Shown here: positions 4,970 to 55,750 of the stretch, piece after piece
Position numbering within the stretch: the stretch's first letter is position 1
How the letters are laid out: every line of letters starts with the position of its first letter
From: Trichoplax adhaerens
Lineage: Eukaryota; Animalia; Placozoa
Direction: 5' to 3'
Length of the DNA stretch: 64,000 bases
Assembly: GCF_000150275.1 (NCBI RefSeq)
Contig: NW_002060952.1
Coordinates: 2,165,128 to 2,229,127 of the forward strand
Made by a program: the position numbers and the translations under genes
The notes under the pieces: model-generated
Told to the model about the DNA's origin: nothing
What the model saw: only the letters and a program-made list of their open reading frames with translations
The model's database searches: none

Positions 4970-7269
4970 ACCCTTTTCTCTTTAGAATTCTAGAAGGTAA
5001 TAAATTCATTTCAGTTCATGTATTGCATAATTTCGTTAGTTTGATTGATAATATTGCCCAGTATTAGAGTATCGATTTGTTAAGTTGATATAGATTGTAA
5101 AATGGCTACAGCGCCGCATAACTCAAGAAAGGTGATCTTAGTTGTAATAATATCATCATTGTCGTGCATCGCTATACAGGATACACTCGTTTTACTTCTA
5201 TGCTACTGTATATGATTATGTATTACGAATCAATAGTGATATGAGGCAGTCAAAATACCGAATCATTCTTTCCAATCAACCTACATGTACGGTTATAACA
5301 AGGTATAACTCTCAAGATAATTTTCATTCATTATATTAACTTTACTTAGTATGTACTGTATTGTTAACACCCTCATAAGTAGATATTAATGCTAAACTGT
5401 ACACTTTGTAACAAGATTAAGAAGAAACTGAGAGATCGATCGCAGCTAAATCCTAGACCAATCCGTAACTGTTTTGAGATTCATTTTTTACCACCAAGAC
5501 CTGACACTTACAACTGACACAAAATCGATAACCTTTATACAGTACTAAGCGTCAATAGATTTAAAATTATCGTAGTAAATTTGTAGCTCGATCTAGTGCA
5601 AGAATATAACATCTAGAATCTTAACGAATATATATTTTCAAGGTGTACTATTGATGCCAGCCAATCTTAAAACATACAATTATACCATGAATTATTACTC
5701 GTATTTAGCTTGTAATGATTCTTAGGCAGAATTTTCAAGTAGGATATAATATAATTTAAGTGTTCCAATTTCACTTCAAAGGGATACAGCTACTGCTACA
5801 AAGGCTTCGTTACATATGAATTAGAGTACTACTTCAGCCGGTCAGATTTAACGTTACTTCTAGTCATGTCTTTAGATTAATTAAACTAATCGATCAGTGT
5901 TTGTAAACTTTGTTTATTAAGTAAGGAATAGGTTAAACAATTTACATTTACTAATGAACTAGGTCGAATTATCTCCGGACTTATTGGTACTTGTAATGAA
6001 ATTATTGATGTATCTCATTGATGAAGGGTATCGAGCAATGCTGGATAGACGATCAGGGCTGAAATATTATGAAATAAAATGTGTGAGAATTGATTGTTCC
6101 ATAGGGTGTGAACGATCATCTAGCAATGAAAGAAGAGAATTAACACTTTCAGTTCATTGACTAGTTCGTTTAGCTTCAATATGTGTACATGAGGGTATTT
6201 AATATATTGATGCTTCTATGTGTAGCTTCGGAAGTGGTTTCTTTACCAGCATTCTAGTACTTTTGACGTCGGGTGCATGTTTTGGTGCGGCTTGTCTGTA
6301 GCGTGATCCTTTTGCAAAACTCTGTTTCCTACTCTCTTTAAAACAGTTGATATAATCAGCAGACGCAACGCCAATGAGGAATAATTAGGGATGATCTCCA
6401 TTCTGCACTCCTGTCAGTTTATACAGCAATTGCTGCTGTAGCTGTATGTTAAACTCATACCAGGTAAACGATATCGACTATAGTAGACTTTTTCAAGGAC
6501 GACTGACAAAAAGAGAGAGAATCATTTTTTTCCAGTACTGCAGTCCCAGACAGTGTCAGAGTATGAATTTATCACATTTTTTTTGTTTTGCGTCACTAGT
6601 GTATATGTTATAGTATAGATAAAGAAGAAACGAAGACAGCCCCTGAAATAGACAATATTGTAGTCCGTTTGTACAGTAGTCTACACCAACTATCGTTTGG
6701 ACGTCAATATCTAGTGCGATCACTGCATTCAAGACAACTTTACCTATTTCAGCAAAGAAAGACAATATCACTTACCAATACAGTAAGAATAATTTTAAAT
6801 TACTACGGCCACGAAGACTTAACCCAACATTATCGAAGAACCCAGACGAGGGAGGAACTGATTGACCAACTGGAATTTAGTTCCAACATCGATCGAATCG
6901 TCAAAACGATCGCCACCCAGACGATGGTACCGTGCAGGACTACAGTACAGGACTGTACTGTAGTCCGTACACTAGCACCCAGTACAGTACTGCACACTCT
7001 GGTGAAATATTACAAAGTCATCCTTACGTGGCCAATCCTGGCTGATGTTGACTACAGTCCTTAGTACTGAGTGTCTAGTACTGTAAGGTACAGTACTAGA
7101 CTGACGAATGGCGAGTAAAATCGCGAGGCTGAGTCTCGTGACTTTGGCCTGAGCCCCATTATGGGATTTGAGGGCAGTTGTAAAACAGACCACTCCAGTA
7201 CGGTACAGTACTGTACAGTGTACAGTACATGGGTACTCCGGTATGTACTGTACATTGTAGACCTAATCT

Positions 7270-8100
7270 ACAAGACAACGCCATTCACTTCGATGGCAAG
7301 ATGGAGTCGAAAATTGAAAGTTACAATTTATGAAAGACTCCTGTTCAAAATCGATATGTACAGGGGCATACTTTGGGCTTGATTTAGCCTCGACAGCTTA
7401 TTTTCCTTAGTGCCAACCAAGTTAATCGCGCTGTACAGTACAGGGTATACTGGACTGCACCTGTAGTCGGTTCGTCTTGTTTACCAGATAGGCATCGATG
7501 TGCTCTGCTTCAACACCAATATCACTCCCCAATCCCCATGCTTCCTTGGAACTGACGGCCCTGCTTTCCATATTAAGTCATAACCTGTAAAATTACTAGC
7601 CATAAATCATTTGTTGGAGAAATTAAGATATCGAAGGCATATACAGTAGGGTTGTCGCTATACTACCGTCGTAGAAGAATAATATCCACTCCAGCTTTCA
7701 TGAGATACCTGAATGAACGCCCCTCCATAAATAACCGATACCTAGTAATTTTAGTTAGTCGCTGAAGGTAGATATTGAAGACAGGCATTAAACCTAGCCA
7801 AACCGAACTATGGGCAGGTCTGACTCTCCAAAGGATGACTATAAATGAAGATCCTGGAGGTCTAATAGCCTCTAGAACATACTGCTAACGTCTAATATAG
7901 TGTAGTGTCGCCTAATGGATCGCAATCCAACGCCAATGCGATATCTTGTTATAGTGTATTGTGAATGAAAATTACTTAAAACCTACTCCGACACGTAGCA
8001 AACCCTAGCAAACCACTTTCACAGTCTACACTCACGATTATACTAGGAAATGATCTTAAAATCCATTTTTAACTCTGATAGAAGATAGCAACCTTGCCTT
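7270..8100 (-). pseudogene. Probable degenerate DEAD-box RNA helicase pseudogene (N-terminal RecA-like domain remnants)
   Basis: Minus-strand fragments in DEAD-box order: LLSSIRVKNGF*DHFLV* (Q-motif-like, ~8037-8095); IALALDCDPLG (~7910-7945); VSVIYGGAFIQ / KAGVDII (GG doublet and pre-motif Ib, 7667-7741); MESRAVSSKEAWGLGSDIGVEAEHIDAYL (motif II region without EAD, 7486-7571); F..ILPSK*MALS (motif III-like, ~7275-7320). There are several stops and frameshifts, and residual splice sites. Confidence 0.45.
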
Positions 8101-44084: not shown

Positions 44085-47000
44085 TTAATTCATAAAAAAT
44101 TGTGCAATGCAATTCGCAAGGCCAAATACTATAACGTATGTATACGATAGAACGTTGATAACAGTTAAACGATTTTCTTTCTTCCGTATTGCAAATTGTA
44201 CAGCGCAGGGTAAAAATAAACAATAAAATAAGCCACCAAATGCGCCAACATACCTATGTGGAAATAAAATAGAACATTATCATCTCTTCCTGCCTATTCA
44301 TAACGAGCAACAAGTTATGTTTTCTTAGGGGTGAATGTACGGTGTATAATGAGATTTTACAAATCATAAGGATTAAAAAGTGTAAAATGCATTCTAAATA
44401 GTAGTATTATATTGCATAGTGAAATTATGCTAACCTTACTATAGTTCCAACATTAGGAAAAAACATCGCACCAAGAACGCATACCGTGGTTAACAAAATA
44501 TTAAATACAAGAACGTGTTTCCAACTAAAAATTGAATAAGTAATCATTAAGTTCATTCCCTTACTGGAAAAGATAAAATATATAAATTAATACAATAGTA
44601 CAGAATATCACCTTGGATATTTCTCTCCATAGAGAGTACTCATTATTTTAATGCGAGCAGCAAATGCTATAATTGGGCACGTAACGATATTCTGGATCAA
44701 TAAAGTTAATCTACCAAGAAACGACATTATATCATCGGGTCCAAAATTATCCAGGAAAACCTATAACAATTTCAATGTAATACTTAAATCTCCCAACTAA
44801 ACGCCATTCTGATTTACAATAAATTGTAAAGCTACCAAAACATTGAACAAATTCGTTACACTTACAGACTGAATACACTGTGCAGATAACGGAAATTTAA
44901 TGATAAATAACATTCCGACCAGTAGGTACGTCACACAGCTACATCCATACGCGATTGTCAGATCTCTAACCTATTATCAAAATCATAATTTGCAAAGGTT
45001 AATCACGAATGTGGCTATTTCGGTAATTTCAGTTCGTAAACTCGTAATTGAGATACTACTATTTACAGTATTTTGGGGATTACGATTGCACTGAGTTACG
45101 GGCAAGAGGTTGGCATGAATAGAAAACGCTGTAGAAACAACACCCGTCACGATCGGAAAAGTTGGTAAGGCTACTAAAAATAAAAATAATAGGCTACAGT
45201 TAGTATCAGAGCGCAATACAGTTGTCGCAAAAATAACAATAACTAATTCATACAAGTAATATATTCATTGCATCCAGTATTGACTACATTCTGAGTTTAC
45301 ATTATAAATACACTAATAGTAGATTTTCAATTATTGATATAATTTAAATAGTAGAGGTCAGTAATACGAGAAAATAATGTCGGAAAATTAAATAAACATC
45401 TGTAACCTACATTCGAAATTCGCGTCAACAGTTGATGTCCAGAAACTGCTCTTGATAATAACGAAAATTACCATATAGATAGATGATAGTATACCTACGA
45501 ATCATCAAATTACAGAAACATTGTTATTGTAAAGTATTTATCGTAAGTAATGATCATTAAATATCCTCTTTTAAGGGGGCTGACTATTACAACCTCTTAT
45601 AAACTTGATGCAGATTAATTGATATTTTACAATATAATAAAAATCGTTCTATAACTTATTTTAAGATAATCAATAATGACTAATAGCTAAAAGTATGTAT
45701 TAATTGCTTGCTAACTTAATTCTTAAAGTTATCTATGTGAAATTGTAGATCGAACAGCTATCGATTACGTATTGCATAAAATTAACAGCTGATATGAAAT
45801 GAATAAATCTAAATCTAAACGTGCACTCTGTATTACTTAGTACGCAGTTTGTCCTTTAGCCTTAGCTATGCATCGAATACTGTCTTATAATTTGCAATCA
45901 AATAGCAAATAGTTAAACTTCTTACCTATCGAACTTAATTTATTGAAAATTACGGGCGATGGAAGATTCAATATCGGAAATAGAATTAATATTAAATATA
46001 ATGGAACGGTCTGTGTTTGATTCCAATATTGATTAAATAACAGATCGTCATCAGTTTCTGTCCAATTACTCCCAAAATTGCTACTATTGACAGTCCCAAC
46101 CGCAGGACATACAACTTCTGTTGTTTTATTAAATTAAAAGAGTCCAATCATTATTTAGGTTGCAATTATAACTATTTTACATTAACTGTGGCTTATCAAT
46201 TTTTATGTTGCATTGTAAGAATATTATACATTGCATAAATAAATTATAATATATAAGACTGCTTACTCCACGGTATCATAGACAGCGCATTAAGCAACCT
46301 GTATTTACTTTAAAATTTACAAAAGCTATACGATTATAAATTATATTTCCAATAAATATGAAAATATACTTACCATTCATGTTGATAGAATTGCTAGAAT
46401 TGCCATGGATATTTCTAATTATTCGATCTTAGTCAGGAAATAATAATTATTGTTATTATTATTATTTATTTATTTTATATTAATTTATATTATACTATGG
46501 AGTTTGAAATAATCTAAATGCATTAAGGTATATTTTTACGATACATAACTACCCAAATGTGCTAGTACAAAACTGTAAAGAGGACACGAGCTCTATAAAT
46601 TCCATACAATCTTATGTGAAATAATTGTTTGATTAACGTAGAGGATAAAATACACTGCCGAAGTGACAGTTTTACAGCTATTGATGTTAACCTTTACGGG
46701 CAATATCAATACTAATGCTACGTAAAGTTACTGGTAAAAGCAGCGAACCTCGTATAAAGTATACCGTTGTATACAAAAAATTACTAGCCAAAATCCAATA
46801 TATGAGACAGACACCAATTAAAACAATTGAAATGATTATACAACTGATTTTTTCACCGGTAGAACCAAGGAAATATCTTATAACATCATTGAAGTCTTTG
46901 TATCCATCCTTGCTCTCTGTGTTATTAAATTCAACAATGTAAATTTGAATTGAGATCAAAAGTATTTTCTACTATACAGAATGATAGAATAAAGTACCGT

Positions 47001-49574
47001 CGGATCATCAAGTTCAATCAAAATTAGTACATAGTTTTAAATTACGTTGAAGAACACAGACTAAAAGATCGCTCTTCAAGTGATAACACCAAGGGATAAA
47101 TCTTTTATAAATAATTGATTACACCACTGAATCACAATCGATCTTTTAATGGTATTCAATATCACTTTTACTATTTGCTAATTAGGCTTCAAAATTGCTA
47201 ATACATTCGTATATGATAACGTGAAAGAAAGAAGTCCATTGCTCATATAGTAATGCTAACCGAAATGTCGCGCGCCTTCAACTACCAAATAGCAAGAGTA
47301 GAGAAGGGTAAGATTGACCAATACTATCAATAATGGACCTAAAATTAAACCAGCCTGAATAAAGAAAGAAATGGCGTCTTCATCATTTACGTTTATCAAC
47401 ACAATAATTATAATTTATAGTAAACGACTATAGTAGAAAATAGCTACTATACAAGCTTCAAGGTATACAAGTGCCATAAATTATACTTTGACAATTTATA
47501 CTGAAGTAAATGCTAGTAACAATGCTATCAGTGGAATGTATCTCATCAACATATTATCTGTTATACTGTATCATGAAACCAACAACTGTAAAAATTGACC
47601 TGCGTAAGCTTCTCGAATTTCTTAATAACATTTAATTTAATTCAGTATAACAAATTGTTCACTAAAAATTATACTTATCCATTGACAGAGTATAATCATC
47701 CATGATAACAAGCGCAAGAAATACCTTTCCAATAGCCCAAGGTATAGATAGGAGAGATGTCCCTAAAGTTAGGTTCCAAATTGTGAATCTAAATTACATG
47801 AGTGGAAGACTGAATATTAATTAAGAGTGAAGTAAGTATACTATTTAAGTGAATCTAGGAGCTGATTATTGCTATAGATATTATTGGCGCTATATTAACT
47901 ACCGTGATTGTGGTTACTGTAGTGCCTACAGGAAAGAAGTATTGTTGAAGCCAAGCGAGTTATACGTATCATTAAAGGCCTTTGAATTGTGTAGTACGAA
48001 AGTTTATTACAGAAGTTATTAATCTACTCCCAAGTGATCTGCATCACTTTTGAGTATATGATTCAAGTGCGTCCTCTTTTCAAGATGCTAACAACATACT
48101 CGTATAGTACAAGAATGAAATACAAGCCATCGTCTGACATTAAGATAGTATCTTCCTAGTAATAAAGATTATTTTCAAGTTTTCAAGTCATTGAAAATAA
48201 TGTTGATAACTGTACGTACTCAGAGCTAGATCGACTCGTATAACGTTATATTTGTTAGTATCATAAAAGGTCCTGCAACATTACTCTGCGACTATTTGTT
48301 GCTGAATTCATTTTATTCAAGAGTATCGATCCAATACGGCATACGTGTTCCTATTATTTGCCGCGATACTATCGGGTTTCTAATCGATCTAGATCAGATA
48401 GTACTGTACGACTGATTATTGCTGAATTTCATTGACTCCAGATTATCGATCCATGCCTGTACATGTATCCATACTATTTTCCATGATCAAATTACTTGAT
48501 GATACCAACAACATCGGCTGGAGTACAATAATGAAATGCATGCTATGCTAAGCATCGATTCTCTCATCCAGCAAAGATTTGCATACCCATGTCAGGAAGG
48601 AGTGCTAGTTGAAAGAGAGGAACGTCCAATGGCTGTTCAATGCCCCAAAATGGCAAGGCTTGTCATTTTGGGGGTCATTCTACTCTACTCTATTACCAGA
48701 ATTTTACACCGCACTGTACAAAACCAATCTGGCAATTTATGTGGATAAGAATTGTGGAGAGCTGAAATGGCCAGTAAAAATAGTCGGTCTGGCCATTTCA
48801 GTAGACTGAGCTAGGGACCAGTAAAACAGTAGTCCCTGAAGTGAACGATCATTTCCGTGATGAGTTATTTTTATGGTTCAAGTATGAATATGAACTTTTG
48901 CAAAGGGAAAATTTTCACAATTGTACCTATTGATAGCTAGCTTGATATTGTCATCATGACTGATCAATGGATGATAGACGTTGTAAAGTTGATGACGGAA
49001 GGAGGGAAATATTGGTGGTGTAGTCGCTGACTCGACACGAGTTTTTGGGTTTTACTCCATTAGAGTATCTCTTGTACAACATACTATAAAATTGTCTTTT
49101 CATCCCATCTGAATGATACGGTCAAGGGATAACAATCATACTAATAGTATTGTTGATGTTCTCCTTGGCATGGACTCATCCTATTACTGTACATACATGG
49201 TGACCAAGCTACTCTGTTTGCCATCCTTTCCTTTCTTAGCAGGAACTTGATTTGCTTGAAATTCTTTCAGGTGACCGTCAGCCATTGTATCCTTGATCTG
49301 CAAAGTATTTTAGAATAGAAATACGCGTGGATCGATTAGAATTTTGAGTCGATGATTGCTCGATTAATCTCTTCGTCGTCATACAGTATTGTAGCCATAT
49401 GGATCACTGCCTTGCATGATATCATCCACTTGGAAATGCAATTGATCGTCCTTTGCCTATCATGAAATCATCAATATACAACCTTACCGTTCGGCTCCCT
49501 GTGCTTTTGCTGTCTTCCGGTAGACCGTCAACGCCATTTTCCTCTAACTTGATCTCAATCATTTTGCTCGCCAT
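44085..49574 (-). CDS. SLC38A9: SLC38A9-like transporter, tandem copy 3
   Basis: Exon 1 MASKMIEIKLEENGVDGLPEDSKSTGSRT (49488-49574) splices in frame to IKDTMADGHLKEFQANQVPAKKGKDGKQSSLVTI, then FTIWNLTLGTSLLSIPW ... NCIAQFFMN*. Confidence 0.9.
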
Positions 49575-49632
49575 CTCATCTCGCTCGCTCGGCTTGCGTG
49601 GCTTTCCCTATCGACTGGTGGCCCTGCTGGCA

Positions 49633-49965
49633 ATATTCTCTCATACGATGTCGTCTACAGTATATCGATCCACAAGTCCAACATGGGTAACCGGACTGAG
49701 GGCCCATTACGGTCACCAGGGTGGGCCTTGTATGGACTTGTACGATGTCGCCTATTTCTACCCATGGGTAACGGAATGAGGGCCCACTACGGTCACCAAT
49801 GTGGGCCTTGTATGACATGTACTAGTACATGGACTTGTAGAAATATTCTCATACGATGTCGTCTATTTCTACCCATGGGTAACCGGAATGAGGGCCCACT
49901 ATGGTCACCAGTGTGGGCCTTGTATGACATACGTCATGGACTTGTAGAAAAATTCTCATAGGATG
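49633..49965. repeat. GC-rich imperfect tandem repeat (3 units) with an internal inverted repeat, immediately upstream of SLC38A9 copy 3
   Basis: The core 'catgggtaaccgga.tgagggccca.ta.ggtcacca..gtgggccttgtatg' occurs at ~49682, ~49763 and ~49874. Confidence 0.85.
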
Positions 49966-50142
49966 CTATTTCGCCTACTGGGCTAAGCCATGGGCATCGA
50001 GAACTGCTCTAAAATTAATTGTTCTATACTATGTCGTCTATTCCCACAAGTCCATTGCCTGTCGGGCCCGGTATGGGGGGATCAACCGGTACCAGGACTG
50101 TAATGAGAACATGGAAATGATCAAGAGACCCTCTATGATAGA

Positions 50143-50860
50143 GGGTCTGTAGTCCTGTCCATCTGTAGACCACCATCCTGGTCCTGTTGTGAAATGATGC
50201 CATCAACAATATACCATAGAAAAGTATAGTATCCACTACAGTCATGATTACAACAGCCAGAATGTCTTCCTTGATCTATAATTAGCTCCCAAAGTACAGA
50301 AAACATGGAGATTTTTCAATGGGGTTAAAGCGTTGCAATGAGTAGACTAGAACGGAAAGCAGCGCCTAACAGCTTTCAATGGGTCTCTAGTCCTGTCCAT
50401 CTGTAGACCGCCATCCTGGTCCTGTTGTGAAATGATGCCATCAACAATATACCATAGAAAAGTATAGTATCCACTACAGTCATGATTACAACAGCCAGAA
50501 TGTCTTCCTTGATCTATAATTAGCTCCCAAAGTACAGAAAACATGGAGATTTTTCAATGGGGTTAAAGCGTTGCAATGAGTAAACTAGAACGGAAAGCAG
50601 CGCCTAACAACTTTCAATGGGTCTCTAGTCCTGTCCATCTGTAGACCGCCATCCTGGTTCTATTCTGAAATGATGCCATCAACAATATACCATAGAAAAG
50701 TATAGTATCCACTACAGTCATGATTACAACAGCAAGAATGTCTTCCTTGATCTACTGTACAATAAGCTCCCAAAGTACAGAAAACGTGAAGATTTTTTCA
50801 ATGGGTTAAAGCGTTGCAATGAGTAGACTAAAACGGAAAGCAGCGCCTAACAGCTTTCAA
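50143..50860. repeat. 238-bp tandem repeat, 3 near-identical copies
   Basis: Units start 'gggtct.tagtcctgtccatctgtagac' at 50143, 50381 and 50619. Confidence 0.95.
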
Positions 50861-52091
50861 CCAAGGAAAGACGGACGGAAAGGACCGGGCTTGAGCAAAA
50901 AGGAGAGGGCCCATTCTCTTACTGGTCATTTGACTAGACCAGCTCACTGCAATCGTACACTGTACTGTCAAAAGTGACCTCACTTGGCTGCTTACGAGCG
51001 CTCACTTAACAGTACAGTGTGCGCTTTTAGAGTTAGAGTAGAGTTGAAATGACTGTCCACTTGTACACTTAATGGACAGTACAGTAGACTAGGAATTGGC
51101 TACCTGGGTAGTTTAGCCAATCCACGGGCGTTTCTCGTCCAGGCCAACGTGGAGAGGAGTGGAAAAGCATACTAGCTCAATATCCATCCCCAATGATTGA
51201 TCATTCTTGACTCTAATTTGCAATATTGAACCTTCTATCTCTGCAATTTCTTTCCAAACAAGTAGTATACAAGGCAATAGGCAGAATTGATGGCTTCCTT
51301 GGGTAATCTAAGCCACAAGTAAGAGATTGTAAAAGCATGCTATCAATAGATCGATTGTAGCAGCGTGTAACGAGTCGCGATTGGCATTTTGCAATCATGC
51401 TCAAGCATCATCAATTTAATTCCATCGTCAACGCTAGATAGGCATCCAACTCACTGTATTCCGTAGAAAAGATTTTTATTCCATCTCATAATGGATTAGA
51501 CTGCTGTACATTTGCTCGATAAACGGCCAATAGGCAATACGCTTCTACCTGTCAATCATGCACTATGAATATGCAACATAGTGTGCGAGCTTCATAGACA
51601 GCTGAACTTGATTCCTTTCCAATCGATGTCGTTTGAAGATCGGTGCTAAGAATACATACTGATGTGTTTAGACTTTACAGATATACACAGGACAAAGAAA
51701 AAAGGTTACTCTAAACTAGTAACAACTAATTGAAAAGCCTCTACTATGGGCACTCTCTATAGTCGAGACTGCACTTACCTGGCTGAGCAACTTCAAGTTG
51801 ATTCTTGACACATAGACCTGCAACTACGGGATAGCATTTTTTGTTTCACTCGAATGTTCTCCCCATCAACGCAACGTCAAAGTTACTAGCTCTAAATGAA
51901 CAACTAGCTGAGATGTAGAATCCTATGCTATGTTGCACTCTCCATAGCTGTCATGTACAATTCATCTCTTGATCATTCATCATCGATCGCCATTGATACA
52001 CAATCGTAGACTATACTGCAACTTTTGAATCAAACATTTCTTCTATACTTTCTGACTTATTCGTGTAACATGTATAATTTGTTCCTGCTAG

Positions 52092-52843
52092 GATATGGCA
52101 TCAATCAGTTACAAATGTGTTACATCGCTATCCTTTTATTATACCTGCAATCAATTCGGTAAGTCTATTCTACATCAATAAGAGCTCTTACTTTGTCAGA
52201 ATTATGTACAACACAGCGTATTCGATGATTATCTTTGCAAACCTATTTACTATGGATAGGCTATCACTTCGGCTGTATCTCCTTGCTGTCAATTAAAAAG
52301 ATCATATTGTAGGTAAGGTATCTTTCTGCTTAAAATTGTTCCAAGTAGTCATTGCTGTCATCTATCGTAGCCATCATGGATTGGATGAAAACCTTCACCT
52401 GCCAAAAAATAGAAATAATACTACTCTCGATAGCAGTTTACATAGGATAATGCCCATGAAATCGATTGATATAATACACTTTGGACTAATGAACACAAAT
52501 ATTGCCCCGAACATCACGCTGAACGATTTCTTGACTTCATTTTTTTTGTAGTAATACCAAACTTGTAAATAAAATCAACCACCGTATTTATCCTCGTATG
52601 TATAAAGGAATCATTGTCAACAGTGATGGTTCAACGATTCGAAGTAGACTAGTCAAGCCCTTTCATGTAGTTCAACTTCCTTTAGATCTCAATCAATTAA
52701 GCGAGAAAGAACGACTGCAACGACTTAAAAAGTTTCAAGATCAGAAAGAAATTATATACGAAGACATACTAAGTGGCGAAGAATTTGACCATGAAGCTGT
52801 CACCAAGTTGATTACTAAAAATACACGTAAAAGCAAAAAGTAA
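52092..52843 (+). CDS. MRPL55: Mitochondrial ribosomal protein bL31m / MRPL55 (5' end uncertain)
   Basis: The main exon 52552-52843 encodes NTKLVNKINHRIYPRMYKGIIVNSDGSTIRSRLVKPFHVVQLPLDLNQLSEKERLQRL, matching the MRPL55 signature (Y.R.Y...V..DGSTI....P......P.DL..LS.EER..RL). Phase-compatible small exons lie at 52260-52312 and 52092-52158. The initiator exon was not identified. Confidence 0.8.
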
Positions 52844-54660: not shown

Positions 54661-55122
54661 TTACAACGTCAAATGCGCTAAGGTTATGGTACAAATCGAT
54701 CATTAAAGTAGAGCATCGCCATAATCTATTATATATTTATTATTATTGCCGTACAGAAATTAATTCATTCTATGCCAATCTAGTACAGTCTTGAAGAAAT
54801 GATATGGACAAGAATTTTCATTTCTTGACAACTTACAAGAATAGCCTATTTTAGACGCAATATTGCGATATCATAACTATTCATCCATAATTACTAATAC
54901 CACTACTTAAAGCCAACACACGATATACTGTAATAGCAGAATCGAAATGACAATGCGCTAACTGATTCTAAATTACGGCTAAGCTTAGAAGAAGATCGAT
55001 TCGGCACTGTTTATTTAATATTTAAGAAGAAAGAATCGTATGCAATGCTCTACTAAGCTTTCCAATCTGGCTAGATTATCCTTGAGAAAAGGCTCCCAGA
55101 TGTCCTAATATCAGTCGTGAAT

Positions 55123-55750
55123 TTAAGGCGTTGGAGCCAAAAATAAAGCAGCACATACCGACATACAGTATCCTTGGCCAGAATTACAAGCCAAAAGCGT
55201 CCCTGGAGTACCCACACCAGCGGTTACAGTACCTGCAACAAGTAAAATCGGATATTAGAGCAAAAGTATTCATTTTATGTGAACGTTATAATGGCTTTAG
55301 ACTGAAATTTTAAATTTTAATCCACAAATGGCCTTGGCTATTAAAAATATAACGTACTTTAATTTAAATATTCCTAAATGTCGTTCAAAAACAATGACTT
55401 ATGAAAACGCTTGACGTTATCCCAGCGGGTAAAATATCTCGACTATATTATTATTACGGTATCTACGCCAAGCTTGCAAGATATTGATATTTTCCACTCC
55501 AATAAAATGTAATTTTTGATGCCTTTTCTATCCGATAGGTATCATTCCATTCTACGAGTATGCTATCGATGCATTGCAAAATAAATAGCAATCAACCTGC
55601 AACGGATCCAAAAAATGCATAGCATGTCACCCAGCCACCATTGCAAGCGGTTTGGCAAAGCCCATATGTCAGTAAACCCGCTTCTGAAATGGAAATTTGC
55701 ATCTGCAATATAAGGATAAGGACAATTATAGTTTGAGCTCGAAATTTCAT
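55123..55750 (-). CDS. Small secreted six-cysteine peptide, 87 aa, two exons (55597-55750 and 55123-55232); absent from the ORF track
   Basis: The joined translation is MKFRAQTIIVLILILQMQISISEA|GLLTYGLCQTACNGGWVTCYAFFGSVAGTVTAGVGTPGTLLACNSGQGYCMSVCAALFLAPTP*. It has a phase-1 GT-AG intron, a signal peptide ending S-E-A, a mirrored CX3CX6C...CX6CX3C pattern and a C-terminal LAPTP. Confidence 0.88.

What the first reader, a model, noticed from the sequence alone, without database searches (positions are those of the whole stretch)
55123..55750. Hidden two-exon secreted disulfide-ladder peptide of a family known mainly from non-animals
Seen: a clean 87-aa spliced ORF with a signal peptide. The ~63-aa mature part has mirrored cysteines (CX3CX6C ... 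CX6CX3C) around a hydrophobic Gly/Ala/Thr-rich segment and ends in LAPTP. It has no charged residues. Recalled, not searched: this pattern (Y..CQ..C......CY...G...GTV.AG.G.P..LLACN...G.C...CA....APTP) matches small 'cysteine-rich' or 'zygote-specific class V-like' proteins of unknown function in fungi, oomycetes and green algae. Inference: it may fold as a helical hairpin stapled by three disulfides with a membrane-inserting loop, making it a candidate lytic or antimicrobial effector. It could have arrived by ancient horizontal transfer or been patchily retained. If the host is a placozoan, which lyses algae externally, its position between lysosomal amino-acid exporters is suggestive.
Basis: partly seen in the sequence, partly recalled or inferred. 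Interest (0 to 1): 0.82.

Follow-up and report, generated by a model that had tools for sequence, protein, structure and literature searches.

The report
Conserved six-cysteine hairpin mini-protein gene
This is a real two-exon Trichoplax gene for a small, uncharged, six-cysteine helical-hairpin protein with a signal peptide; it belongs to a large uncharacterised family found across eukaryotes, other animals included, so neither gene transfer nor a lytic role is supported.

Summary
On the minus strand, exon 1 (55750-55597), a GT..AG intron (55596-55233) and exon 2 (55232-55123) give an 87-codon frame. It has a signal-peptide-like start and a mature part with no charged residue. Its cysteines are spaced CX3CX6C-X23-CX6CX3C, and it ends in APTP.

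The gene is not new. Trichoplax sp. H2 already carries the same model as hypothetical protein TrispH2_006804, which differs at 2 residues.

It is not a non-animal family. Members lie on chromosome-scale contigs of Nematostella, a coral, Daphnia and Chironomus, and also occur in nematodes and a centipede.

Trichoplax cannot be placed robustly on the tree. A placozoan+cnidarian clade is not rejected (p-AU 0.32), so transfer is unsupported.

AlphaFold2 predicts a confident helical hairpin, and the mirrored cysteines fit three cross-braces.

Zero charge and 80-90% identity between arthropods, fungi and algae argue against a fast-evolving antimicrobial effector. The function remains unknown. My best guess is a translocated, disulfide-stapled hairpin that acts at membranes or surfaces.

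The parts
55597..55750 (-). Coding exon 1: start codon at 55750-55748, residues 1-51 plus the first base of codon 52
   Evidence: 98% identical to residues 1-51 of TrispH2_006804. Donor CAG|GTTGAT.
55679..55750 (-). Signal-peptide-like N-terminus (residues 1-24: MKFR, hydrophobic core, then SEA|G with small residues at -3 and -1)
   Evidence: Read from the sequence, no predictor was run. The family alignment shows a conserved small-x-A|G-P junction just before the domain. The N-terminal segment is much more hydrophobic than the mature part. Modelled as helix 3-23.
55613..55675 (-). Helix 1 of the hairpin (residues 26-46), with C32, C36, C43 and invariant Q33, N37
   Evidence: AlphaFold2 model, pLDDT about 94-95 in this block. 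Invariant columns.
55233..55596 (-). Intron, 364 nt, GT..AG, phase 1, inside the codon of Gly52 in the conserved loop
   Evidence: Same boundaries in the H2 gene model. The coding region is uninterrupted in the Nematostella, Desmophyllum and Daphnia homologues, and the intron lies elsewhere in Chironomus and Ascaris.
55123..55232 (-). Coding exon 2: last two bases of codon 52, residues 53-87, TAA stop at 55125-55123
   Evidence: Own-genome search matches residues 50-87 of the H2 protein at 97%.
55141..55203 (-). Helix 2 of the hairpin (residues 62-82), with C67, C74, C78 and invariant N68, G72
   Evidence: AlphaFold2 model. Invariant columns.
55010..55015 (-). AATAAA, a candidate polyadenylation signal 108 nt after the stop (weak evidence in an AT-rich genome)
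   Evidence: Read. Identical in H2. By my estimate the chance of one in 200 nt is roughly one in four.

Best explanation
This is a genuine single-copy protein-coding gene of Trichoplax and the orthologue of TrispH2_006804. It encodes an 87-residue precursor. Shown: it belongs to a large, unnamed, eukaryote-wide family of about 63-residue domains with six invariant cysteines (CX3CX6C-X23-CX6CX3C), invariant Gln, Asn and Gly positions, almost no charged residues and a C-terminal PTP. Inferred: the N-terminal signal peptide takes the precursor into the ER and is cut after Ala24. The mature 63-residue chain folds as an antiparallel helical hairpin. Three disulfides brace it: C32-C78, C36-C74 and C43-C67. 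In each helix the three cysteines lie on one face, and the residue numbers of each pair add up to 110. The resulting uncharged, Ala/Gly/Thr/Val-rich rod is released into the secretory pathway or outside the cell. There it most likely acts by sticking to or packing against a membrane or other apolar surface, or against copies of itself. This would be a conserved structural or housekeeping-type role rather than a fast-evolving weapon. The gene was most likely inherited within animals from an old eukaryotic family, with many losses, rather than recently transferred.
For: Gene and splice. Family: phmmer finds 297 clusters at E<=1e-3 and 42 at E<=1e-10; the profile search finds 886 proteins, and P0001 scores 4.2e-29 against the profile. 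The six Cys are invariant in 82 members, and Trichoplax keeps all 16 invariant columns of a gapless 63-column alignment. Fold: AlphaFold2 mean pLDDT 84.3, with helices 26-46 and 62-82 at pLDDT above 90. Charge and solubility: 168 of 201 domains hold no D, E, K, R or H. The summed membrane-insertion cost of the best 19-mer is median +5.9 for helix 1 and +3.4 kcal/mol for helix 2, and more in Trichoplax, against -2.0 for the best 12-residue stretch of the signal peptides. This favours translocation over membrane integration (scale values recalled). Slow evolution: Daphnia is 91% identical to Trametes and 83% to the green alga Gonium over 64 residues. Animal members in genuine animal loci: Daphnia is flanked by chitinase and homeodomain genes, and there are tandem pairs on a 22-Mb Nematostella and a 6.6-Mb coral contig. 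A Trichoplax+Cnidaria clade is not rejected, p-AU 0.32. Only one hit turned up in 185,579 prokaryotic genomes, on an AT-rich 3.3-kb contig that looks like eukaryotic contamination of a MAG.
Against: No expression data for this genome were available. Signal-peptide cleavage and disulfide pairing are inferred, not measured, and I could not read the model's coordinates. A protein with no charge at all and GRAVY about +0.85 (family +1.16) could still be membrane-embedded. A subgroup that includes a dinoflagellate member carries the domain at the extreme N-terminus without a signal peptide, which fits a membrane hairpin more easily. An all-animal clade is rejected (p-AU 0.004), so either old paralogues or some transfer exist in the family. 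In the smaller tree Trichoplax grouped with Glomeromycota (95/89). H1 and H2 are too alike (about 99% everywhere, intron included) to show purifying selection on this copy.
Confidence: 0.55

Rival explanations
1. It is an integral membrane mini-protein, like a proteolipid. The two Ala/Gly/Cys-rich helices form a transmembrane hairpin, with the N-terminal segment either cleaved or serving as a third helix. The cysteines and small residues form the tight helix-helix interface, and the protein works as a subunit or oligomer in a membrane.
For: 168 of 201 domains have no charged residue, and domain GRAVY is +1.16. Very slow evolution at nearly all positions, as in small membrane subunits. The weak structural neighbours are mostly small membrane hairpins such as ATP synthase subunit c, GtrA, PsaK and HCV p7. 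Variants of the subgroup that includes a dinoflagellate member have the domain at the very N-terminus without a signal peptide, followed by further hydrophobic segments.
Against: Invariant Gln and Asn inside both helices and many Gly/Thr/Ser give a high summed insertion cost: median +5.9 and +3.4 kcal/mol, and about +6 to +10 in Trichoplax. Kyte-Doolittle 19-mers of the Trichoplax mature part stay below 1.3. There are no flanking positive charges to set a topology. Six invariant cysteines in mirrored register behind a signal peptide fit disulfides in an oxidising compartment. All structural matches are statistically insignificant.
Confidence: 0.22
2. It is a secreted membrane-inserting lytic or antimicrobial effector that Trichoplax uses for external digestion or defence, acquired by horizontal transfer from a fungus, oomycete or alga, or patchily retained.
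For: A signal peptide and a hydrophobic disulfide-braced hairpin are compatible with membrane activity. The Trichoplax copy is the most divergent of the named members, at 48-66% identity. The smaller tree put it next to Glomeromycota. One IMG/VR contig of a probable RNA virus carries a family member, which recalls virus-borne fungal killer toxins. The family tree does not follow the species tree.
Against: There is no net positive charge, unlike most membrane-lytic antimicrobial peptides. Family members are 80-90% identical across kingdoms, the opposite of arms-race evolution. The gene is single-copy. Cnidarian, arthropod and nematode homologues exist in genuine animal loci. A placozoan+cnidarian clade is not rejected, and the fungal affinity vanishes with more sampling. 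The flanking transporter genes are no evidence in a eukaryote. Only one of the six related viral contigs found carries the gene, so that contig may be a chimeric assembly.
Confidence: 0.1
3. It is a surface or wall-building protein that self-assembles at interfaces, like a hydrophobin or a zygote or cyst-wall component, in line with the 'zygote-specific' label of the algal relatives.
For: Source names for relatives include 'Zygote-specific protein' (Gonium, Trametes pubescens) and 'Hydrophobin' (Ganoderma). It is small, secreted, cysteine-rich and hydrophobic. Many lineages holding the family make resistant resting stages; this last point is my own knowledge and was not tested.
Against: The names are automatic or transferred labels with no experiment behind them that I could find. 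Pfam hydrophobin models do not match, and the eight-cysteine hydrophobin pattern is absent. Trichoplax has no wall, and resting stages are not established for it. The homo-oligomer prediction gave no verdict.
Confidence: 0.1

Closest known systems
TrispH2_006804, hypothetical protein of Trichoplax sp. H2 (P0001)
   Same: Orthologue: same two-exon model, 87 residues, 85 of 87 identical. The DNA is about 99% identical including the intron and flanks. The neighbours are the same: Aa_trans, Mitoc_L55, Aa_trans.
   Different: Two substitutions: S20F in the signal peptide and L82W near the C-terminus. The window's own assembly has no protein on record for this gene.
Unnamed eukaryotic family labelled 'Cysteine-rich protein' or 'Zygote-specific protein' in sequence databases (for example Daphnia DAPPUDRAFT_309423, Nematostella LOC116601956/7, Gonium GPECTOR_9g533, Gigaspora C2G38_1982239, and a Phytophthora aleatoria protein)
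   Same: Signal peptide, the 47-residue six-Cys span, all 16 invariant columns, a charge-free domain, a PTP end, and a length of about 85 residues.
   Different: The Trichoplax copy is the most divergent named member, at 48-66% identity against 70-91% among most others. It has Phe-Phe and Ser/Gln/Tyr replacements that lower hydrophobicity, and an intron at a position not shared with the other animal genes examined.
Plant alpha-hairpinins (CX3C-Xn-CX3C helix-loop-helix defence peptides)
   Same: Works alike in architecture: two antiparallel helices cross-braced by disulfides between CX3C-type motifs. This comparison rests on my knowledge of that family.
   Different: No sequence relationship was detected. 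Alpha-hairpinins have four cysteines, are charged and are usually cut from larger precursors. This family has six cysteines, no charge and a long conserved Gly-rich loop.
Fungal hydrophobins (Pfam PF01185, PF06766)
   Same: Small, secreted, cysteine-rich, hydrophobic. One relative is even labelled 'Hydrophobin' by a source.
   Different: No Pfam match in any of 82 members. Hydrophobins have eight cysteines in a different pattern and a beta-barrel core, not a helical hairpin.
Twin CX3C / CX9C helical-hairpin proteins of the mitochondrial intermembrane space (small Tims, CHCH domain)
   Same: A mirrored cysteine ladder pins an antiparallel helical hairpin.
   Different: Those proteins have no signal peptide, four cysteines, many charges and are imported by Mia40. 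Here there is an ER-type signal peptide, six cysteines, no charge and no sequence similarity.

Membership tests
Eukaryotic six-Cys hairpin family ('Cysteine-rich protein' / 'Zygote-specific protein', no Pfam entry) | Significant sequence similarity to family members across both helices | tested here: met
   phmmer with the H2 orthologue: best other hits E 2.8e-15 to 1e-10, covering residues about 6-87. P0001 scores E 4.2e-29 against the family profile. The window's exons match P0001 at 98% and 97%.
Eukaryotic six-Cys hairpin family | Six cysteines spaced CX3CX6C-X23-CX6CX3C (47-residue span) | tested here: met
   C32, C36, C43, C67, C74, C78 are invariant in 82 aligned members. 201 of 271 retrieved proteins have the exact span.
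Eukaryotic six-Cys hairpin family | Invariant non-cysteine positions (mature numbering G1, Q9, N13, V17, G24, G28, G33, N44, G48, P61) | tested here: met
   Trichoplax keeps all of them in the gapless 25-sequence alignment A3.
Eukaryotic six-Cys hairpin family | Mature domain essentially free of charged residues | tested here: met
   0 D/E/K/R/H in both exon-encoded mature parts. 168 of 201 family domains also have none.
Eukaryotic six-Cys hairpin family | N-terminal signal peptide with a small-x-Ala|Gly junction, and a chain ending about 9 residues after the last Cys in PTP | tested here: met
   By inspection and alignment only, no signal-peptide predictor was available: MKFR plus a hydrophobic core plus SEA|G. 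It ends in APTP. 146 of 201 domains end within 10 residues of the C-terminus.
Eukaryotic six-Cys hairpin family | Helical-hairpin fold with three inter-helix disulfides | tested here: inconclusive
   The hairpin is predicted with pLDDT above 90 in both helices. The disulfide map is inferred from the mirrored register only. No solved relative exists.
Hydrophobins (PF01185 / PF06766) | Match to the Pfam models and the eight-cysteine pattern | tested here: not met
   No Pfam hit for P0001 or any of 82 relatives. It has six cysteines, not eight.
Sea anemone neurotoxin (PF00706 Toxin_4) | Score above the Pfam gathering threshold | tested here: not met
   E 7.6 and 7.5 bits against a cut-off of 27: a chance match.
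Cationic membrane-lytic antimicrobial peptides (functional class) | Net positive charge and amphipathic helices | tested here: not met
   The mature part has no charged residue. Lytic activity itself cannot be tested with these tools.
Horizontally transferred gene (claim, not a family) | Robust nesting of the recipient's gene inside a donor clade, and absence from the recipient's relatives | tested here: not met
   Cnidarian, arthropod and nematode homologues exist. A Trichoplax+Cnidaria clade is not rejected, p-AU 0.32. With 56 rows no supported clade holds Trichoplax. Only 64 columns are available, so resolution is poor.

The most novel reading that the evidence does not exclude
The family is an ancient membrane-active secreted factor that has moved between kingdoms more than once. 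This would explain near-identical copies in arthropods, fungi and algae, the rejected all-animal clade, and a copy on a probable RNA-virus contig. On this reading the fast-evolving Trichoplax copy has been recruited as a pore-forming or lytic agent for external digestion.
Probability: 0.1. Interest if true: 0.7.

Novelty: new member of a known kind. Interest (0 to 1): 0.35.

Why it matters
For Trichoplax this adds one small secreted-type gene that appears to be missing from this assembly's protein set and is already predicted in strain H2. The family is the more interesting object. It has at least 886 sequence clusters across animals, fungi, algae, oomycetes, diatoms, dinoflagellates and foraminifera. 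It has no Pfam entry, no solved structure and no experiment that I could find. Its 63-residue charge-free six-cysteine domain stays 80-90% identical between kingdoms. Constraint that strong on so small a secreted-type protein points to a conserved and still unknown partner or material property. Trichoplax, Nematostella and Daphnia would be tractable animals in which to find it.

Tried and rejected
- Pfam on both exon peptides, on the H2 orthologue and on 82 relatives found no family.
- The word-index search with exon 1 and with P0001 found only P0001 itself. Relatives appeared only with full HMMER or the profile.
- PDB was negative by sequence profile, by Foldseek (nothing at E<=1e-3) and by VIA-align wide (generic hairpins with Z<=6.6).
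- The Atlas search restricted to named clusters, using the mature part, gave no usable hit.
- The homo-tetramer prediction of residues 25-87 gave no verdict (score 0.00, controls not run). It counts neither for nor against self-assembly.
- Intron-position conservation was tried as a test of common descent. The coding region is uninterrupted in Nematostella, Desmophyllum and Daphnia, and the intron lies at different loop positions in Chironomus and Ascaris. The test is therefore uninformative.
- The H1/H2 comparison for selection failed: about 99% identity everywhere, with two non-synonymous and no synonymous differences, which is too few.
- Literature searches for the Chlamydomonas 'class V zygote-specific' gene and for locus tags of the family found nothing. 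That link stays a recollection plus database labels.
- Earlier findings of this scan held nothing for this place or these words.
The exons were searched by reference, and all full-length work used the database protein P0001.

Full report
**What is in the sequence**

The feature lies on the minus strand. Reading down from 55750, an ATG opens a frame of 51 codons plus one base (MKFRAQTIIVLILILQMQISISEAGLLTYGLCQTACNGGWVTCYAFFGSVA). It ends at a donor, CAG|GTTGAT, at 55597/55596. Read through without splicing, the frame stops at a TGA one codon later.

An acceptor, TTGTTGCAG|GT, at 55233/55232 opens a second exon. After the two bases that complete Gly52, it reads TVTAGVGTPGTLLACNSGQGYCMSVCAALFLAPTP and then TAA at 55125-55123. 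The exons are 154 and 110 nt, 264 nt in all, which gives 87 codons and a stop. The intron is 364 nt, in phase 1.

- The cysteines are C32-x3-C36-x6-C43 and C67-x6-C74-x3-C78.
- There is no charged residue after the presumed cleavage site SEA|G.
- The chain ends in LAPTP.
- An AATAAA lies 108 nt past the stop at 55015-55010. This is weak support in a genome of about 32% G+C.

The exons were searched by reference. All full-length analyses used the database protein P0001.

**Whose genome, and is the gene known**

A word-index search with exon 1 returned a single protein, P0001. It is 'hypothetical protein TrispH2_006804 [Trichoplax sp. H2]', 87 residues, 98% identical. It has exactly the splice model proposed here and differs only at S20F and L82W.

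The H2 locus aligns to the window at about 99% identity through exons, intron and flanks alike. The window's assembly has 105.6 Mb in 1414 contigs. From memory, that fits the Trichoplax adhaerens reference.

The gene is single-copy in this genome. No protein from this assembly is on record for it, so 'hidden' is fair for this assembly, but the gene is already predicted in the sister strain. H1 and H2 are too close to say anything about selection: two non-synonymous and no synonymous differences, and similar divergence in the intron.

**The family is real and large**

Pfam has nothing for either exon, for P0001 or for any of 82 relatives. The only flicker, an anemone toxin model at E 7.6, is noise.

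A full HMMER scan of 1.84 billion cluster representatives with P0001 found 297 clusters at E<=1e-3 and 42 at E<=1e-10. A profile of 82 of them then found 886 proteins.

The six cysteines are invariant. The six-Cys span is exactly 47 residues in 201 of 271 retrieved proteins. A gapless 63-column alignment of 25 named members has 79% mean column identity and 16 invariant columns: G1, C8, Q9, C12, N13, V17, C19, G24, G28, G33, C43, N44, G48, C50, C54, P61. Trichoplax keeps all of them.

The splice junction falls inside the conserved 'G-TVTAG' loop and restores it exactly. This confirms the intron independently.

Sources name the relatives 'Cysteine-rich protein', 'Zygote-specific protein' and, once, 'Hydrophobin'. 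I found no paper behind these labels.

**It is not a non-animal family**

Named members come from these non-animal groups:
- Mucoromycota, Mortierellomycota and Glomeromycota
- Polyporales and other Basidiomycota
- Phytophthora
- the green algae Gonium and Chlorella
- a diatom, a foraminiferan and a dinoflagellate

They also come from animals:
- Nematostella vectensis has two tandem genes on a 22-Mb contig.
- The coral Desmophyllum pertusum has two genes on a 6.6-Mb contig.
- Daphnia pulex and D. sinensis each have one.
- The midges Clunio and Chironomus each have one.
- So do the nematode Heterodera trifolii, the centipede Strigamia and Ascaris.

The Daphnia gene sits between a GH18 chitinase, hydrolase genes and a homeodomain gene. 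The Chironomus and Ascaris genes contain introns. These loci are genuine animal loci and not contamination.

Only one hit turned up among 185,579 prokaryotic genomes. It lies on a 3.3-kb AT-rich contig of a metagenome-assembled genome, with a splice-acceptor-like site just upstream of the ORF, and looks like a eukaryotic stray.

**Horizontal transfer**

I built trees from the 64 alignable columns. With 41 named rows, Trichoplax grouped with Glomeromycota (95/89) and then with the cnidarians (98/91). All of these share a 'W-V-x-C ... VAG' variant of helix 1.

The AU test does not reject a Trichoplax+Cnidaria clade (p 0.32). It does reject a clade of all animals (p 0.004), because the arthropod copies belong to the ultra-conserved 'FTFGTVTAG' type.

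With 56 rows, including more Glomeromycota, a nematode, dinoflagellate-type members and unnamed close hits, no supported clade holds Trichoplax at all. Intron positions do not help. The coding region is uninterrupted in Nematostella, the coral and Daphnia, and the introns of Chironomus, Ascaris and Trichoplax lie at three different places in the loop.

There is therefore no positive evidence of transfer into placozoans. Descent from a placozoan-cnidarian ancestor is compatible with the data. The family tree as a whole departs from the species tree. With so few columns this may reflect old paralogues, saturation of a tiny conserved domain, or some transfer.

**Structure**

AlphaFold2 with the 82-row alignment gives mean pLDDT 84.3. 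It models helices at 3-23 (signal peptide), 26-46 and 62-82, and a 15-residue loop, with both hairpin helices above 90.

Within each helix the cysteines sit at i, i+4, i+11 and at i, i+7, i+11, which places them on one face. The residue numbers of mirrored cysteines all sum to 110 (32+78, 36+74, 43+67). That is the register expected for an antiparallel hairpin pinned by three disulfides. The pairing is inferred, since I could not inspect coordinates.

No solved structure is related by sequence or significantly by fold.

**How it probably works**

Most members start with a typical signal peptide. The junction small-x-Ala|Gly-Pro is conserved, which points to cleavage that leaves Gly as the first mature residue.

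The mature domain is remarkable for having no charge: 168 of 201 domains have none, and GRAVY is +1.16 (+0.85 in Trichoplax). That raises the question of whether it is a transmembrane hairpin. I summed a biological insertion scale over the best 19-residue stretch; the values are recalled from Hessa et al. 2005, so this is approximate. The medians are +5.9 kcal/mol for helix 1 and +3.4 for helix 2. In Trichoplax the mature-part stretches sampled cost about +4 to +11. The best 12-residue stretch of the signal peptides gives -2.0. The cost comes from the invariant Gln and Asn and the many Gly/Thr/Ser residues.

I therefore favour full translocation and disulfide formation in the ER. The product would be a secreted or luminal apolar rod that acts on membranes, on surfaces or on copies of itself. 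An integral-membrane reading keeps about one chance in five. It is helped by a subgroup, which includes a dinoflagellate member, that has the domain at the extreme N-terminus without a signal peptide, followed by 'KFLAEGSAET', Ala/Gly-rich stretches, a membrane anchor and a charged tail.

**The lytic or antimicrobial idea**

Nothing here tests activity, but two facts argue against it. First, the peptide has no positive charge. Second, the family evolves extremely slowly: Daphnia is 91% identical to Trametes, 83% to Gonium and 83% to Linnemannia over 64 residues. That is the pattern of a constrained structural or housekeeping component, not of an arms-race effector.

The Trichoplax copy is the most divergent named member (48-66%), so a change of role in this lineage cannot be excluded. 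The flanking Aa_trans genes and the mitochondrial L55 gene give no functional information in a eukaryotic genome. I did not test whether those transporters are lysosomal. A homo-tetramer prediction returned no verdict.

**Verdict**

The gene is a new member, for this assembly, of a database-known but uncharacterised kind. Interest in the Trichoplax gene itself is modest. The family as a whole deserves a description and an experiment, being pan-eukaryotic, absent from Pfam, charge-free and ultra-conserved.

Noticed in passing
L008:2446-2697 (+), IMG/VR contig IMGVR_UViG_3300031002_000002, 3279 nt: A complete 83-residue family member (signal peptide, six-Cys hairpin, APTP end, Polyporales-like) lies downstream of a 759-residue ORF (43-2322) on a contig filed as viral. 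That ORF has no Pfam or phage match. It contains 'STDYQEATDRL' and 'RGVLMGDPMTKVVL', which I recall as resembling motifs A and B of narna/mito/ourmia-like RNA polymerases, with no GDD after them. Four full-length related IMG/VR contigs (52-57% identical protein) are only 2.3-2.5 kb and lack the small ORF; a fifth is a 1-kb fragment. L008 is therefore either a virus that captured a host mRNA or a chimeric assembly.
   Followed up: partly
L009:445-703 (+), contig JAVBJR010000013.1 of a 'Dysgonomonas sp.' MAG: This is the only hit in 185,579 prokaryotic genomes. It is an uninterrupted 85-residue family member on an AT-rich 3.3-kb contig, with a splice-acceptor-like 'atatgcag' just upstream of the ATG. 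It looks like a eukaryotic contig mis-binned into a bacterial MAG.
   Followed up: partly
P0011, P0015, P0034, P0044, P0055, P0072 (database proteins, not in the window): A second architecture of the family. The hairpin sits at the extreme N-terminus (MASLVSYGxCQ...) without a signal peptide. A conserved 'KFLAEGSAETAA(S/T)GGVMGP' follows, then long Ala/Gly/Ser/Thr-rich stretches, a membrane-anchor-like segment and a charged tail. One member is from the dinoflagellate Gymnodinium smaydae, and others are MMETSP transcripts.
   Followed up: partly
L004:15177-15428 and L004:18893-19144 (Nematostella vectensis, OW051985.1): The two tandem Nematostella genes are annotated as 153- and 126-residue proteins. 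The family-like part is a single 84-codon exon that starts at an internal Met (MAARKM... / MATRKM...). The N-terminal extensions come from upstream exons and may be untranslated leader wrongly read as coding.
   Followed up: partly
P0157 (Ascaris lumbricoides, UniRef name 'Transmembrane 9 superfamily member', 208 aa): The name looks wrong. The sequence is two copies of a first exon of this family, read through into intron-like sequence after 'TVTAGAG', plus one second exon. That is a mis-modelled tandem or spliced gene of this family, with an intron a few codons downstream of the Trichoplax position.
   Followed up: no
window 52598-52840 (+) and 46690-46959 (-): The nearest downstream neighbour is a mitochondrial ribosomal protein L55 exon (Pfam E 3.8e-11). 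An Aa_trans amino-acid transporter exon lies further on. In strain H2, Aa_trans genes flank the locus on both sides, which suggests a tandem pair of transporter paralogues split by two small genes.
   Followed up: partly
window 48001-52000 and 6001-8000: G+C rises to about 0.41 in these stretches against about 0.30-0.35 elsewhere. They are probably exon-dense segments and were not examined.
   Followed up: no
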